NCBI RefSeq assembly: GCF_006345805.1
Contig: NC_043012.1
Location: forward strand, 9,362,001 to 9,426,000
Direction: 5' to 3'
From: Octopus sinensis
Lineage: Eukaryota
DNA length: 64,000 nt
Under the pieces are notes generated by a model. It worked only from the letters and a program-made list of their open reading frames with translations. It had not been told where the DNA came from and did no database searches. Each line of letters opens with the position of its first letter. Within the stretch, counting starts at the first letter, position 1. Below are positions 33,929 to 64,000 of the stretch, piece after piece. Made by a program: the position numbers and the translations under genes.

Positions 33929-36900
33929 GCATAGGCAAAAATATTAGTGTATAAATACATGTATATTTACATATATGCATAGATACTACCACAAATGCAT
34001 ATATCCATACATACAACCACATATACATATATACATACATGCATATATAAATACATGCATAGATACATACACACATACATAAGTAGACACACAAACACAT
34101 ATATAGACACAATGTTACACATTATATTATACATAACTCGTAGATTGGCAGAAAGGTGAGAATGCCGGACTAAATGCTTTGCGGTATTACTTCCAGCACT
34201 TGAGGGTCTGCGATGATATGAAACCGAGGTACCAGTAAAGTACTGGGGTTGATCTACTCGATTAACATCATTGTCATCAAACTTGATATCCTTGTGCGTT
34301 AATTAGAAATTAACACAACAATTAGGCATGCTATTATTTTTGTACTTGTTGAAACCCAACTCATGCCATAATTGAACACCATTCATGATCAAAAGGAATC
34401 CATTTGTGACCATACCATATTTTATTGATACACCCAATATCGAAGCACACATTATCCAATAGGGACTTCCATCTTAAATGTTACGATTTGAGTCAAATGT
34501 GGTTACCATTTCTTGCACATTGAGTAACCATGTAGATGTCTCTCGTTTTATTTCTCGCTTCCATGGTGACCATGTCGATTGGTCAATCGACGGAATTACC
34601 TATTCATTAAGCTAATGTTCAAAGTGGTTGAATATTCCACAGGCCCTTTGTAACTATAATCTAACGCTAAGTCGGCACCAGTGTGATGCAAGTGTGACTA
34701 GGCTGGCTCTCTAAATTACAAGTACTATCTACCAGAAGGGCTGTCATACAGCTTACGTCTACCAAATTATACTTACAAGACTCGGCTTTGGTAAAAGAAT
34801 TAAACTTGCCGAAGATGCCAGACAGTAGAATCGATTAAAGGATCTCATGATTGCGAAGAGAATTTCTTAACTGGTCGCCCATGTTTCATCTCTATGTGGA
34901 TACGTTTGCTCGTAATGTGAAATTGTATTGAAACGAAAATTTCTAAGTGAAGAGCTTCGAATTTCTAAAATTTGTGTAGAAAGTAATACTCTTCTGGCAA
35001 GAAGTTTCCGTGTATATCGATGCCCAAACAGCTCAGGGCCCTGCGTTACATCATAAAGCTTCCTCTGGAGTTTTTTTAAGAATAGCTTTTGGCTGAATCG
35101 TGAAGAACGATCACGTAACCAATTGGTGAGATGTCTAGCGAACAAACAACACTTGGTAATGAACCGAAACGAACATGTTGTCATGTAATCGATGAGCATA
35201 ATTAGATAGACCTGTTATTAAAGAATAGTGTACAGATTCGATCATCCAGTCCAGTAACATAACGGTTTGAAATGTTGGCACTAGGTCAGAAATTTCGAGG
35301 GATCGGATAAGTCGATTACATTGATCCCAGGGCTCAACTAGTAAGTATGTTATCGACCTCGGAAGGATGAAAGACAATGTTAACCTCGGTGGAATTTGAA
35401 CTCAGAACGTAAAGACGGACGAAATACTAAACATTTTGTCCCGCGTACTGGTGATTCTGCCAGCTAGCAATATAACGGCAATACCATAAAGAAGTTTAAT
35501 TGGTTTACATCCAAATCCACTCTTTACGTTAGTACACGTGGTAAAACAGGAAAGGACAAGCAACATAATCTGGCTTCTGCTTGAGCTGATAATCGAAATG
35601 TTTCACCACTCCGTTAGATATTCGAAGGTAAACCAAAATATGGGTTCAATCCCAGCTTAGCTATAGTGTCATGTCAGTAAGCATGTTGCATTCTCAGTGC
35701 TCTCCTCTGGTGTAATGGTAGACAGTATTATCTATCAAGAATTCCTGTCCGGTAAGAAAGCTTAAGCCACCGCATCATTTGTTTCATGAGTTAGTTACTA
35801 CCGTCAACATTGAAATGTGGTGGTCAATAGATGAGCTACAATGGTATAGGAATGATCATTGATGAAGATTAATTGTTATATGGTTGATTATCAATATGAG
35901 AGGTCAGTGCGTAGAATAGGTGTTCAACAGTTGGATGGACTATAACAATTTATTAAAGGTCAACGGTAAAAATTTGGGGTCAACTATTCGATGATATACA
36001 CTTGTTTATGAGAGATCAAAGAAAACTATTACTGGTTAACATTTGGATGACCATCGACAATATAGTGAAAGCGAGTGGTTATGATCGGTGATTAGCTGGT
36101 GGATGGATTACAACCACGTATCACAGGCGAAAGGTCAGAGATCAGAGGTCAGGCTTGGTGATCAGCCTGTGGGTGGGTTACAACAGCTTATGAAAGAGAA
36201 GAAATAAGTGGTCAGCTAATAAACTGAGCTCTATCCATATTCGAAATCTCAAAGGTAAAAGACGGATGATCCCCTAACCGTCAAACTTCATATTCATTGC
36301 GGAAAGAATACAGAATTATGGGCGAGACTGTAGACTCTCTAATATTTGCCAATAAATCTTTGGTGGAAACCATTTTCCATCTGTCACCTCTGACGATCAC
36401 TAGGGATGGGCATGGATAGCTTTAGGTACAAATTATCACATGGAGAGAATGGAAACGAACTAATAGGAAAATGCACTCTTCTAAATCATGCGTTAGTCAT
36501 TAAGAGTATATTCGGATCAACCTGGACATGAAACATATAAATTATCCTTTCTACTGGAAGTACAAAACCTCAAATTTGGGGAAAGGGATTAAGTGGATTA
36601 CATCGACCACAATGCGTAACTGGTACTTATTTAATCGCTCCCGAAAGGATGAAATACAAAGTTAACCGCGACGGAATTTGAACTCAGAACGTGGCGGTAG
36701 ATGAAATACCGCTGAGTATTTTGCTTGACGTACTAGCAATTCTGACAGCTAGCCTCCTTAAATGGAACATAAATTATATAAGTTAAAAAAACTTATGAAA
36801 TCTTCATCAATTTTTGCCAAACTCTCATCAACGGTGAGTTGTGTTTGAAAATATATAGAATTTCGAAGAAAGACCTGAATTCTTCAGCTTTTCTGAAAAA

Positions 36901-37714
36901 GAAGAGTTATTAAATATTTTCACAGGGATAACTATGATCTAAATAAAATATATAAATATATTACAATAAGAATATCTAGAAAAATAGCAGAGATATTTAT
37001 TATAGAAATATTTTCCAAATTGCTTGTGTTCTAAATTATATTTTACTTCCTATATAATGTGTGGCCATGAGGTTGGCAAAATTTTATTCTGCCATGTTTT
37101 GTTTAAAAAGCAACCATTCTCTTAGAGACGCAAAAAATATGAATGCTTCCTTTCCATATTTTTCTGACAATAATCTATTCTACAACATTTTAAATATAAT
37201 ATTTAATTTCTTTATTTTTTTTGCGCAGAACATGAGACAGAATAATAAACTGTTGGTTTTAAAATCCATAATATTAATAAAAATGTACATGGGAAAAATT
37301 TTATTCACGCCAGTATAATTGTTTTTTTATTCTCCTCATATAAAAGAAAAAAAAGAGAACGATAAATTTTAATAAACCAAGCCAATTAGAAAATATGCCG
37401 ATGGTTATTGAAATTTATATTACTATTTTAAAATCCAATCAGTCAATTTCTGATTTTTATGAAAAATTCTGAAATTTCATATTAAATTAGCAATCCATCT
37501 GCATATATAGACGTTTAAACAGTCGTATATGTAGCTTCATTTGATAGCAATTAAGGATGATTGAATGTTTGAGTAAGGATAAAACACAATCTTTGTCACT
37601 GTGAAAAGATAGGGATGAGAGTTAAACGAGAAATTATTTTAAACACGTATCAGAGGCCAGATTCTCCTGAACAGATAGATGGAGGGAAATAAATAGATAG
37701 AGAGATAAATAGAC

Positions 37715-37779
<65 letters not shown>

Positions 37780-61252: not shown

Positions 61253-61333
<81 letters not shown>

Positions 61334-64000
61334 GTCTATTATCTCTCTATCTATTTATTTCCCTCCATCTATCTGTTCAGGAGAATCTGGCCTCTGATAC
61401 GTGTTTAAAATAATTTCTCGTTTAACTCTCATCCCTATCTTTTCACAGTGACAAAGATTGTGTTTTATCCTTACTCAAACATTCAATCATCCTTAATTGC
61501 TATCAAATGAAGCTACATATACGACTGTTTAAACGTCTATATATGCAGATGGATTGCTAATTTAATATGAAATTTCAGAATTTTTCATAAAAATCAGAAA
61601 TTGACTGATTGGATTTTAAAATAGTAATATAAATTTCAATAACCATCGGCATATTTTCTAATTGGCTTGGTTTATTAAAATTTATCGTTCTCTTTTTTTT
61701 CTTTTATATGAGGAGAATAAAAAAACAATTATACTGGCGTGAATAAAATTTTTCCCATGTACATTTTTATTAATATTATGGATTTTAAAACCAACAGTTT
61801 ATTATTCTGTCTCATGTTCTGCGCAAAAAAAATAAAGAAATTAAATATTATATTTAAAATGTTGTAGAATAGATTATTGTCAGAAAAATATGGAAAGGAA
61901 GCATTCATATTTTTTGCGTCTCTAAGAGAATGGTTGCTTTTTAAACAAAACATGGCAGAATAAAATTTTGCCAACCTCATGGCCACACATTATATAGGAA
62001 GTAAAATATAATTTAGAACACAAGCAATTTGGAAAATATTTCTATAATAAATATCTCTGCTATTTTTCTAGATATTCTTATTGTAATATATTTATATATT
62101 TTATTTAGATCATAGTTATCCCTGTGAAAATATTTAATAACTCTTCTTTTTCAGAAAAGCTGAAGAATTCAGGTCTTTCTTCGAAATTCTATATATTTTC
62201 AAACACAACTCACCGTTGATGAGAGTTTGGCAAAAATTGATGAAGATTTCATAAGTTTTTTTAACTTATATAATTTATGTTCCATTTAAGGAGGCTAGCT
62301 GTCAGAATTGCTAGTACGTCAAGCAAAATACTCAGCGGTATTTCATCTACCGCCACGTTCTGAGTTCAAATTCCGTCGCGGTTAACTTTGTATTTCATCC
62401 TTTCGGGAGCGATTAAATAAGTACCAGTTACGCATTGTGGTCGATGTAATCCACTTAATCCCTTTCCCCAAATTTGAGGTTTTGTACTTCCAGTAGAAAG
62501 GATAATTTATATGTTTCATGTCCAGGTTGATCCGAATATACTCTTAATGACTAACGCATGATTTAGAAGAGTGCATTTTCCTATTAGTTCGTTTCCATTC
62601 TCTCCATGTGATAATTTGTACCTAAAGCTATCCATGCCCATCCCTAGTGATCGTCAGAGGTGACAGATGGAAAATGGTTTCCACCAAAGATTTATTGGCA
62701 AATATTAGAGAGTCTACAGTCTCGCCCATAATTCTGTATTCTTTCCGCAATGAATATGAAGTTTGACGGTTAGGGGATCATCCGTCTTTTACCTTTGAGA
62801 TTTCGAATATGGATAGAGCTCAGTTTATTAGCTGACCACTTATTTCTTCTCTTTCATAAGCTGTTGTAACCCACCCACAGGCTGATCACCAAGCCTGACC
62901 TCTGATCTCTGACCTTTCGCCTGTGATACGTGGTTGTAATCCATCCACCAGCTAATCACCGATCATAACCACTCGCTTTCACTATATTGTCGATGGTCAT
63001 CCAAATGTTAACCAGTAATAGTTTTCTTTGATCTCTCATAAACAAGTGTATATCATCGAATAGTTGACCCCAAATTTTTACCGTTGACCTTTAATAAATT
63101 GTTATAGTCCATCCAACTGTTGAACACCTATTCTACGCACTGACCTCTCATATTGATAATCAACCATATAACAATTAATCTTCATCAATGATCATTCCTA
63201 TACCATTGTAGCTCATCTATTGACCACCACATTTCAATGTTGACGGTAGTAACTAACTCATGAAACAAATGATGCGGTGGCTTAAGCTTTCTTACCGGAC
63301 AGGAATTCTTGATAGATAATACTGTCTACCATTACACCAGAGGAGAGCACTGAGAATGCAACATGCTTACTGACATGACACTATAGCTAAGCTGGGATTG
63401 AACCCATATTTTGGTTTACCTTCGAATATCTAACGGAGTGGTGAAACATTTCGATTATCAGCTCAAGCAGAAGCCAGATTATGTTGCTTGTCCTTTCCTG
63501 TTTTACCACGTGTACTAACGTAAAGAGTGGATTTGGATGTAAACCAATTAAACTTCTTTATGGTATTGCCGTTATATTGCTAGCTGGCAGAATCACCAGT
63601 ACGCGGGACAAAATGTTTAGTATTTCGTCCGTCTTTACGTTCTGAGTTCAAATTCCACCGAGGTTAACATTGTCTTTCATCCTTCCGAGGTCGATAACAT
63701 ACTTACTAGTTGAGCCCTGGGATCAATGTAATCGACTTATCCGATCCCTCGAAATTTCTGACCTAGTGCCAACATTTCAAACCGTTATGTTACTGGACTG
63801 GATGATCGAATCTGTACACTATTCTTTAATAACAGGTCTATCTAATTATGCTCATCGATTACATGACAACATGTTCGTTTCGGTTCATTACCAAGTGTTG
63901 TTTGTTCGCTAGACATCTCACCAATTGGTTACGTGATCGTTCTTCACGATTCAGCCAAAAGCTATTCTTAAAAAAACTCCAGAGGAAGCTTTATGATGTA
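53225..64000 (-). repeat. Right arm of giant palindrome (open at the window end)
   Basis: Reverse complement of 35047-45641. The last bases ...ttatgatgta mirror tacatcataa at 35047. Confidence 0.99.

What the first reader, a model, noticed from the sequence alone, without database searches (positions are those of the whole stretch)
35047..64000. Giant palindrome (arms of at least 10.6 kb) centred on the ribozyme array, with a divergence gradient
Seen: outer arms differ by scattered substitutions, by eye about one per few hundred bp (ORF pairs TESSLL/TESLLL, TFFSTS/TFLSTS, HSHNN/HSRNN). Inside ~43900/55130 the difference rises to several percent and is highest next to the spacer (9 of 65 residues differ in the MKRTISDV ORF pair). 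Inference A: a real palindrome homogenised by arm-to-arm gene conversion, as in mammalian Y palindromes, with conversion fading near the loop. Inference B: an old ~1.7-kb inverted repeat at which the assembler turned back onto the other haplotype. It may extend well beyond the window.
Basis: partly seen in the sequence, partly recalled or inferred. Interest (0 to 1): 0.72.

Follow-up and report, generated by a model that had tools for sequence, protein, structure and literature searches.

The report
Two-layer giant inverted repeat, unverified
The window holds a real-looking 11-kb inverted-repeat core around a small satellite array, flanked by nearly identical inverted arms of at least 8.9 kb that are either a young genomic inverted duplication or an assembly turn-back, and sequence alone cannot say which.

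Summary
The inverted repeat is there. Left arm 35047-45646 matches the reverse complement of 53220-64000, and the right arm is cut by the window end. The divergence is a step, not a gradient. The outer arms differ at 10 of 8,882 aligned sites (0.11%). From 43930/55098 inwards they differ at 56 of 1,710 sites (3.3%), with no significant rise towards the centre. The left satellite copy differs from the right array by 2.3-3%, so it belongs to the same old layer.

The centre is asymmetric. The right side lacks about 3 kb present on the left, and there are 1.2 inverted against 8.5 direct satellite copies. They meet head-to-head at about 49168. This rules out a simple fold-back read. The 11.2-kb core is probably genuine.

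A single discrete event at 43930/55098 made the outer arms alike. It happened either in the genome (fold-back or template-switch duplication seeded by the old inverted repeat, or one long conversion) or in the assembler. The satellite consensus is noisy (singleton deletions), which flags a trouble spot. No independent copy of the locus could be retrieved. No hammerhead ribozyme is supported by Rfam. No genes lie in the arms. Interest is moderate to low until reads are checked.

The parts
35047..43929 (+). Left outer arm (young layer), non-coding and rich in SINEs and microsatellites
   Evidence: 10 substitutions in 8,882 aligned sites against 64000-55099 (7 transitions, 3 transversions; 2 at CpG), four 1-bp indels and an (ATAG)n length difference. 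No ORF >=140 aa.
43930..45646 (+). Left inner arm (old layer)
   Evidence: 56 substitutions in 1,710 sites (3.3%; 27 transitions, 29 transversions) against 55098-53220. Indels of 7, 8, 18, 21 and 110 bp lie mostly in the CCA-type microsatellite 44484-44651.
45647..48305 (+). Left-only segment, missing from the right side
   Evidence: A SINE starts at about 45624 inside the arm. The right arm keeps only its first ~17 nt (ggcggcgagctgaca) and then jumps into mid-satellite at 53220, so the right side reads as a ~3-kb deletion. The segment holds an inverted SINE pair (45624-45741 +, 45864-46036 -) and SINE fragments at 46679-46807 and 46864-47018.
48306..48617 (.). (TA)n microsatellite on the left side only
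   Evidence: TRF: period 2, 160 copies, 80% matches.
48614..49168 (-). 1.2 satellite units in inverted orientation (L1 plus partial L0)
   Evidence: Aligns to the reverse complement of the right array. L1 differs from R2-R8 at 11-14 substitutions (18 against R3) in ~472 bp, i.e. 2.3-3%.
49168..49169 (.). Head-to-head junction of the two satellite blocks, the true turning point
   Evidence: The sequence reads ...gtcatttctaccaaaa|tgtataatgccctctata..., and the two blocks meet about 80 bp out of phase.
49169..53219 (+). Direct array of 8.5 units of a 472-bp satellite (R1 to partial R9)
   Evidence: TRF: period 472, 8.5 copies, 97% matches, 2% indels. R2-R8 differ mainly by singleton 1-2-bp deletions, and R1 next to the junction is the outlier. 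The CTGATGAATACGTAAGTATGAAA box occurs once per unit.
53220..55098 (-). Right inner arm (old layer)
   Evidence: Mirror of 45646-43930 at 96.7% identity over aligned sites, 181 bp longer because of microsatellite insertions. An imperfect ~13-bp tandem duplication sits at its outer edge.
55099..64000 (-). Right outer arm (young layer), cut by the window end
   Evidence: Mirror of 43929-35047 at 99.89% identity. Stretches of 3,025 and 2,662 bp show no difference.

Best explanation
The structure has two layers of different age.

Layer 1, probably real. This is an old inverted-repeat core of 11.2 kb (43930-55098). It has two 1.7-kb arms about 3.3% apart. Each arm leads into the same 472-bp satellite, and the satellite blocks meet head-to-head at about 49168. 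The centre was later made asymmetric by a ~3-kb deletion and by array expansion on the right side.

Layer 2. Everything outside 43930/55098 is 99.89% identical in inverted orientation. One discrete event at that point made it so.

My best single guess is that the event happened in the assembler. At the genuine inverted repeat the contig path left the right inner arm and ran back into the reverse complement of the left flank instead of into the true right flank. Polishing with reads of both haplotypes then left a few allelic differences between the two copies. On this reading the outer arms are a false inverted duplication and only the core is biology.

Shown: the two layers, the sharp boundary, the asymmetric centre and the noisy satellite consensus. 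Inferred: where the event took place.
For: - The step is sharp. Divergence goes from 0.11% to 3.3% at L 43930 (delta lnL 76.5), with a flat plateau inside that extends into the satellite. That means one event with one endpoint at the edge of a pre-existing inverted repeat, which is the pivot a bidirected assembly graph can mis-traverse.
- The outer differences look like real alleles rather than consensus errors: 7 transitions to 3 transversions, 2 at CpG, plus microsatellite length changes. Their density of about 1 per kb is in the range reported for heterozygosity (0.1-1.6% in Rhie 2021, PMC8081667).
- No arm-specific transposon insertion or indel >17 bp occurs in 8.9 kb of outer arm, so that layer is very young or has no age at all.
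- Among R2-R8 the differences are mostly singleton 1-2-bp deletions, which outnumber substitutions (TRF 2% indels). This is the signature of a poorly supported long-read consensus exactly at the pivot.
- False duplications are among the commonest assembly errors and need depth or k-mers to detect (PMC8081667).
Against: - The inverted repeat is only 1.7 kb long, 3.3% diverged, and carries arm-specific indels of 7-110 bp. The whole core is 11.2 kb. Ordinary long reads should span it and resolve the exit, so the mis-traversal is not an easy error.
- There is no N gap, so this is not a simple scaffolding of a haplotig.
- A read-level fold-back artefact is excluded. Those turn within about 200 bp and carry two strands of one molecule (PMC12870357). 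Here the young layers are 11.2 kb apart, and the centre differs by 3.3% and a 3-kb indel.
- The locus already made one palindrome (the core), so a second biological event there is plausible.
- I could not see contig ends, read depth or any independent assembly.
Confidence: 0.45

Rival explanations
1. Real two-step palindrome. The old inverted-repeat core seeded a recent genomic inverted duplication. After a break or a stalled fork at about 55098, the right inner arm annealed to the left inner arm on the same strand (fold-back), or the nascent strand switched template. Synthesis then copied the left flank outwards. The result is near-identical outer arms around an 11.2-kb 'spacer' made of the stem and the loop.
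For: - The architecture matches sequenced human fold-back inverted duplications. Those have a single-copy spacer of 0.77-70 kb (median 3.4 kb) bounded by inverted homology, including repeat pairs 82-95% identical, with the transition inside the repeat (PMC3907307).
- In yeast, inverted repeats 30 kb apart and up to 25% diverged still fold back in single-stranded DNA (PMC10164571).
- The boundary is sharp and the outer layer is young with no arm-specific insertions.
- A complex mutation cluster (5 substitutions plus an imperfect ~13-bp tandem duplication within 45 bp) sits at the boundary and could be a junction scar.
- The locus has formed an inverted structure before.
Against: - Fold-back events usually give dicentrics or terminal deletions and are rarely transmitted. 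An interstitial version needs a second junction, which would lie outside the window.
- Nothing in the sequence separates this from the assembler doing the same thing in silico.
- The outer divergence (0.11%) is what allelic variation would also give.
Confidence: 0.3
2. Single-origin palindrome with a conversion-exclusion zone. One old event made the whole palindrome. Arm-to-arm gene conversion keeps the outer arms alike. The inner 1.7 kb escaped, accumulated mismatches and indels, and is now locked out by heteroduplex rejection, which gives a sharp boundary.
For: - The outer part meets the usual working criteria for large palindromes (arms >=8 kb, >=99% identity; PMC8327919).
- Rearrangements and asymmetric deletions concentrate at the centre of symmetry in primate X palindromes. 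That matches the ~3-kb one-sided deletion and the copy-number asymmetry here.
- Conversion tracts of up to 9 kb have been inferred in human P6 (PMC3723533).
Against: - No gradient exists. There are zero substitutions in the last 1.5 kb of the outer arm, then an immediate 3%.
- The first 540 bp of the old layer has no large indel that could block conversion.
- No arm-specific insertion has appeared in 8.9 kb over the long time implied by 3.3% divergence.
- Arm divergence is about five times that of human Y palindromes (0.02%).
- There are too few differences and no outgroup, so GC bias cannot be tested.
Confidence: 0.2
3. The whole right half is the other haplotype. Both arms, inner parts included, are alleles of one locus next to a long satellite. 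The assembler joined the array of one haplotype to the reverse complement of the other through false overlaps between satellite units.
For: Both arms enter the satellite in the same relative orientation. The array consensus is noisy and may be collapsed. Structural polymorphism next to satellites is common.
Against: - It still needs a genuine head-to-head satellite junction at 49168.
- R1, next to that junction, is the most diverged unit, as expected of a true array edge.
- The single variable site GAAATC[A/C]CTG follows A-C-C-A-C-C-A-C across R1-R8 without a break, so there is no sign of a chimeric switch.
- 3.3% allelic divergence directly beside 0% over 1.5 kb would be a strong outlier.
Confidence: 0.05

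Closest known systems
Fold-back inverted duplications with a spacer (Hermetz et al. 2014, PMC3907307; yeast fold-back inversions, PMC10164571)
   Same: Two inverted copies of a flank are separated by a non-duplicated segment of a few kb to tens of kb. Its ends carry inverted homology, and the switch from old to new sequence lies in or at that homology.
   Different: Here the inverted homology is long (1.7 kb plus satellite) and is itself part of an older palindrome. The distal end (telomere, translocation or second junction) is outside the window. Copy number is unverified.
Large sex-chromosome palindromes kept alike by arm-to-arm gene conversion (human Y P1-P8; primate and mouse X palindromes)
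   Same: Arms are at least 8 kb at more than 99% identity around a spacer, with instability and asymmetric deletion at the centre of symmetry.
   Different: No genes lie in the arms. There is a diverged inner layer with a sharp edge, which is not described in the palindrome papers I read. Conversion cannot be shown from one sequence, and the chromosome is unknown.
False (haplotypic or homotype) duplications in long-read assemblies (Rhie et al. 2021, PMC8081667)
   Same: A near-identical second copy sits next to the first. The differences are at the level of heterozygosity, and the copy lies beside a repeat with poor consensus.
   Different: The copy is inverted, gap-free and inside one sequence, and it pivots on a repeat short enough to be spanned by reads. 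Contig ends and depth cannot be seen.
Fold-back read artefacts in nanopore gDNA (Heinz, Meyerson and Li 2026, PMC12870357)
   Same: An inverted self-join.
   Different: Those turn within about 200 bp and both halves come from one molecule. Here the halves differ by 3.3% and a 3-kb indel at the centre, and the young layers are 11.2 kb apart.

Membership tests
Large near-identical palindrome (working criteria of Jackson et al. 2021) | Inverted arms >=8 kb with >=99% identity around a spacer | tested here: met
   Outer arms have 8,882 aligned sites at 99.89% identity. Over the full 10.6-kb arms identity is 97.6% with gaps, so the criterion holds only if the old inner arms are counted as spacer.
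Large near-identical palindrome (working criteria of Jackson et al. 2021) | Both arms present on one DNA molecule, with doubled copy number | not testable with these tools
   No reads, depth or independent assembly. Look-ups and searches were empty.
Large near-identical palindrome (working criteria of Jackson et al. 2021) | Ongoing arm-to-arm gene conversion (variant patterns across individuals or species, GC bias) | not testable with these tools
   Only 10 differences and no outgroup or population data.
Fold-back inverted duplication | Non-duplicated spacer between the inverted copies, within the reported 0.77-70 kb | tested here: met
   11,169 bp lie between the two step points 43930 and 55098. 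Of this, 7.6 kb lies between the inner arms; only about 3 kb of it (45647-48617) is confined to one side, the rest being satellite units present on both sides.
Fold-back inverted duplication | Inverted homology at the two ends of the spacer | tested here: met
   43930-45646 against 55098-53220 at 96.7% identity.
Fold-back inverted duplication | Distal junction (telomere, translocation or second template switch) and loss or retention of the original distal flank | not testable with these tools
   The right arm runs off the window at 64000.
False duplication in an assembly | About half the normal read depth on each copy, with arm-specific variants behaving as alleles | not testable with these tools
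   No read data.
False duplication in an assembly | Gap (N run) or contig end at the join | tested here: not met
   The window holds no N. Contig ends cannot be seen.
False duplication in an assembly | Adjacent low-quality or collapsed repeat | tested here: met
   Satellite units R2-R8 differ mainly by singleton 1-2-bp deletions.
Read-level fold-back artefact | Turn within about 200 bp, with both halves being the two strands of one molecule | tested here: not met
   The halves differ by 3.3%, a ~3-kb indel and 1.2 against 8.5 satellite units. Definition taken.
Hammerhead ribozyme (Rfam hammerhead families) | Match to a covariance model: conserved core plus helices I-III | tested here: not met
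   No hit at gathering score, at E<=1 or at E<=10 on 1 kb. Only the CUGAUGA-N12-GAAA box is present. By hand, the hairpin next to GAAA is out of register with the core, and no helix I partner was seen.
Transposon with long terminal inverted repeats (foldback-type element) | Inverted termini bounded by unrelated host flanks | tested here: not met
   The flanks outside the 1.7-kb inverted repeats are themselves inverted copies of each other. No coding ORF lies in the interior.

The most novel reading that the evidence does not exclude
The outer arms are real. This would be a germline palindrome caught while growing. An old inverted-repeat core of about 2.3 kb per side, centred on a head-to-head satellite junction, primed a second recent fold-back or template-switch duplication that extended the arms by at least 8.9 kb. 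It would leave two clean age layers (3.3% and 0.11%) and a scarred junction at 43930/55098. That would be a natural example of stepwise palindrome growth seeded by inverted repeats, in an invertebrate-like, gene-poor region.
Probability: 0.3. Interest if true: 0.5.

Novelty: new member of a known kind. Interest (0 to 1): 0.3.

Why it matters
If the outer arms are real, the locus shows with base-pair resolution how a small diverged inverted repeat can seed a much larger palindrome. That step has been reconstructed in yeast, tumour cells and patients but is rarely seen as a standing germline structure with both age layers preserved.

If the outer arms are an artefact, the locus is a useful warning. 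A genuine short inverted repeat next to a satellite can make an assembler produce a gap-free palindrome of over 30 kb whose arm differences mimic gene conversion.

Either way there are no genes in the arms, so the functional stakes are low. The value is mechanistic or methodological.

Tried and rejected
- Independent copies of the locus or organism identification all failed. An exact look-up of 10 window ORFs found nothing. A contig look-up for an ATG ORF found nothing. Three homology searches (arm ORF, Helitron-like ORF, gag-like ORF) found nothing (one search was a coordinate error). A metagenome scan with a satellite 28-mer found nothing. A full-text search for sequence strings gave only chance hits. 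The SINE looks octopus-like to me from memory, which is a lead and not a result.
- I tested whether the left-only segment also has noisy consensus by using its SINE copies. Pairwise BLAST suggested more gaps there. The multiple alignment showed these are larger old indels in 20-30% diverged copies, not 1-bp noise, so I rejected it as evidence.
- Homopolymer concordance between the arms is uninformative. There are only 8 runs >=7 nt, and the longest differs (A11 against A12).
- Patchiness of the outer differences (bins 0,0,2,3,3,0,2,0) is not significant by my chi-square (about 10.8, 7 df). It gives no support for a mosaic of conversion tracts.
- A fold-back read at the centre is rejected on asymmetry.
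- A transposon with long inverted termini is rejected because its 'flanks' mirror each other.
- The ribozyme reading is rejected on Rfam and on a single-strand fold that is no better than shuffles (z -1.17).

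
Full report
**What the window is.** The window is AT-rich (about 35% GC) and full of microsatellites. It has no tRNA genes, no Rfam family at gathering score and no long ORFs. A ~180-bp SINE family occurs at least eight times. This is gene-poor nuclear DNA of a eukaryote. I could not identify the organism. Every route to outside data returned nothing. The SINE reminds me of octopus SINEs, but that is memory, not a test.

**The observation.** The inverted repeat is real and far beyond chance. 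Bases 35047-45646 align with the reverse complement of 53220-64000 over 10,786 columns at 97.6% identity. The left arm starts at 35047 only because its partner would lie beyond base 64000. The true arm length is unknown and is at least 10.6 kb. The MKRTISDV pair differs at 8 of 65 residues, not 9.

**Step, not gradient.**
- A base-by-base list of differences and a change-point fit show two rates.
- From 35047 to 43929 there are 10 substitutions in 8,882 sites (0.11%).
- From 43930 to 45646 there are 56 substitutions in 1,710 sites (3.3%).
- The two-rate model improves the log-likelihood by 76.5 units.
- The last 1.5 kb of the outer part has no substitution at all. The very next 45 bp has five substitutions plus a complex indel.
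- Inside the old part the four quarters show 3.0, 3.5, 2.3 and 4.2%, with no significant trend by my chi-square on the counts.
- The distribution of the 10 outer differences is also compatible with uniform.
- The outer differences look like real mutations: 7 transitions and 3 transversions, two at CpG, plus length changes in (ATAG)n and a long A run.

**The centre.**
The 472-bp satellite is present as 8.5 direct units (49169-53219) that abut the right arm directly. It is also present as 1.2 inverted units (48614-49168) on the left, separated from the left arm by (TA)n and 2.66 kb of left-only sequence.
- Read from the outside in, both arms therefore enter the satellite in the same orientation. 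The two blocks meet head-to-head at about 49168, about 80 bp out of phase.
- The left-only segment begins inside a SINE whose first ~17 nt are still present at the end of the right arm, followed at once by mid-unit satellite. The right side has therefore lost about 3 kb, or the array has overwritten it.
- The left unit L1 differs from R2-R8 at 11-14 substitutions per ~472 bp (18 against R3), i.e. 2.3-3%. This is the same level as the inner arms.
- The old layer therefore runs from 43930 through the centre to 55098, 11,169 bp in all.
- One-sided deletions and rearrangements concentrated at the centre of symmetry are what has been described for primate X palindromes and transgenic palindromes (PMC8327919).

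**Consensus quality.** Units R2-R8 are almost identical in substitutions (0-3 between most pairs; R3 differs from the others at 6-8) but carry many singleton 1-2-bp deletions, often outside homopolymers. TRF reports 2% indels against 97% matches. Real satellite variation is not normally dominated by deletions. I read this as residual long-read consensus error in an array that reads do not fit well, because it is collapsed or heterozygous in length. The arms are clean by comparison, with four 1-bp indels in 8.9 kb. The pivot of the palindrome is thus the least trustworthy part of the sequence.

**What can be excluded.**
- A fold-back read artefact. Such reads turn within about 200 bp and carry the two strands of one molecule (PMC12870357). 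Here the halves differ by 3.3%, a 3-kb indel and satellite copy number.
- A scaffolded haplotig. There is no N gap.
- A transposon with long inverted termini. The sequences outside the 1.7-kb inverted repeats mirror each other, and the interior has no coding capacity.
- A ribozyme array as labelled. No hammerhead or other self-cleaving family is found at any threshold tried. The local fold is no better than shuffles. Only the CUGAUGA-N12-GAAA box recurs.

**What remains.** The 11.2-kb core is short enough for single long reads and its two arms are clearly distinguishable. I take it as probably genuine: an old inverted duplication around a head-to-head satellite junction. The question is what made everything outside 43930/55098 nearly identical. 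The sharp edge and the flat plateau point to one event with one endpoint at the edge of the old inverted repeat. Three readings fit.
1. The assembler left the right inner arm into the mirror of the left flank, and polishing with both haplotypes left allelic differences.
2. The genome did the same thing. Fold-back priming or template switching at the old inverted repeat copied the left flank. Sequenced human cases show this design, with a spacer of 0.77-70 kb bounded by inverted homology and the transition inside the repeat (PMC3907307). Yeast work shows that repeats 30 kb apart and up to 25% diverged still fold back in single-stranded DNA (PMC10164571).
3. One old palindrome is homogenised by conversion everywhere except an inner zone now locked out by its own divergence. 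Long tracts exist (up to 9 kb inferred in P6; PMC3723533).

**Weighing.**
- For the artefact: false duplications are among the commonest assembly errors (PMC8081667). The pivot has poor consensus. The outer divergence is at the level of heterozygosity. The outer layer shows no sign of age.
- Against the artefact: a 1.7-kb, 97% repeat with arm-specific indels should be spanned by reads, and the join is seamless.
- For a real event: the locus has already formed one inverted structure, and the design is textbook fold-back.
- Against the conversion model: there is no gradient, no large indel at the start of the old layer that could block conversion, and no arm-specific insertion in 8.9 kb over the time implied by 3.3% divergence.
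- My estimates are artefact 0.45 to 0.5 (including the all-allelic variant), real two-step growth 0.3, and conversion with an exclusion zone 0.2. The sequence alone cannot decide.

**Comparison and novelty.** Whichever reading holds, this is a member of a known kind: a fold-back-type inverted duplication or palindrome, or a false duplication. The two clean age layers would be an instructive natural example if real. No genes lie in the arms. Interest is moderate to low until reads are checked. The checks are simple and are listed under next steps.

Noticed in passing
window 49169-53219: At the single common variable site of the satellite unit (GAAATC[A/C]CTG), units R1-R8 read A-C-C-A-C-C-A-C (R5 inferred through a 1-bp deletion). 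This hints at a three-unit (about 1.4 kb) higher-order repeat. It rests on one site only.
   Followed up: partly
window 49190-49670 (unit R1): The unit next to the head-to-head junction is the most diverged (17-26 substitutions from R2-R8 and an 8-bp insertion ATTGCCCG). This is expected of a true array edge, or of the worst consensus.
   Followed up: partly
window 45624-46036: Two SINE copies in inverted orientation form a ~400-bp hairpin. Rfam's weak MIR2670 hit (41 bits against a gathering score of 117, E 3.7e-6) is this hairpin, not a credible miRNA.
   Followed up: partly
window 55050-55098 (mirror 43930-43973): At the edge of the old layer there are five substitutions within 13 bp. The right arm also has an imperfect ~13-bp tandem duplication (GCAAAATTAACC|AGCAAATTAACACC) where the left has CTGA. 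It could be a junction scar or just a complex mutation.
   Followed up: partly
window 21989-22516 (- strand): A 175-aa ORF whose C-terminal half resembles, from memory, the N-terminal region of Helitron-type helicase proteins. It found no homologue in the protein collection.
   Followed up: partly
window 8840-9892 (- strand): A GC-richer block (44%) with three adjacent ORFs of 111-123 aa in different frames. One carries a degenerate zinc-knuckle-like motif (CLKPGH), so this is possibly a decayed retroelement gag/ORF1. It found no homologue.
   Followed up: partly
window 32384-32564 and 43102-43282: A 181-bp inverted pair at 94% identity, one copy outside the palindrome and one inside the left arm (mirrored at about 55750-55930). 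Probably another dispersed repeat.
   Followed up: no
window 44484-44651 and 54228-54575: A CCA/TGG-type microsatellite inside the inner arms is 168 bp on the left and 348 bp on the right. It accounts for most of the length difference between the inner arms.
   Followed up: yes
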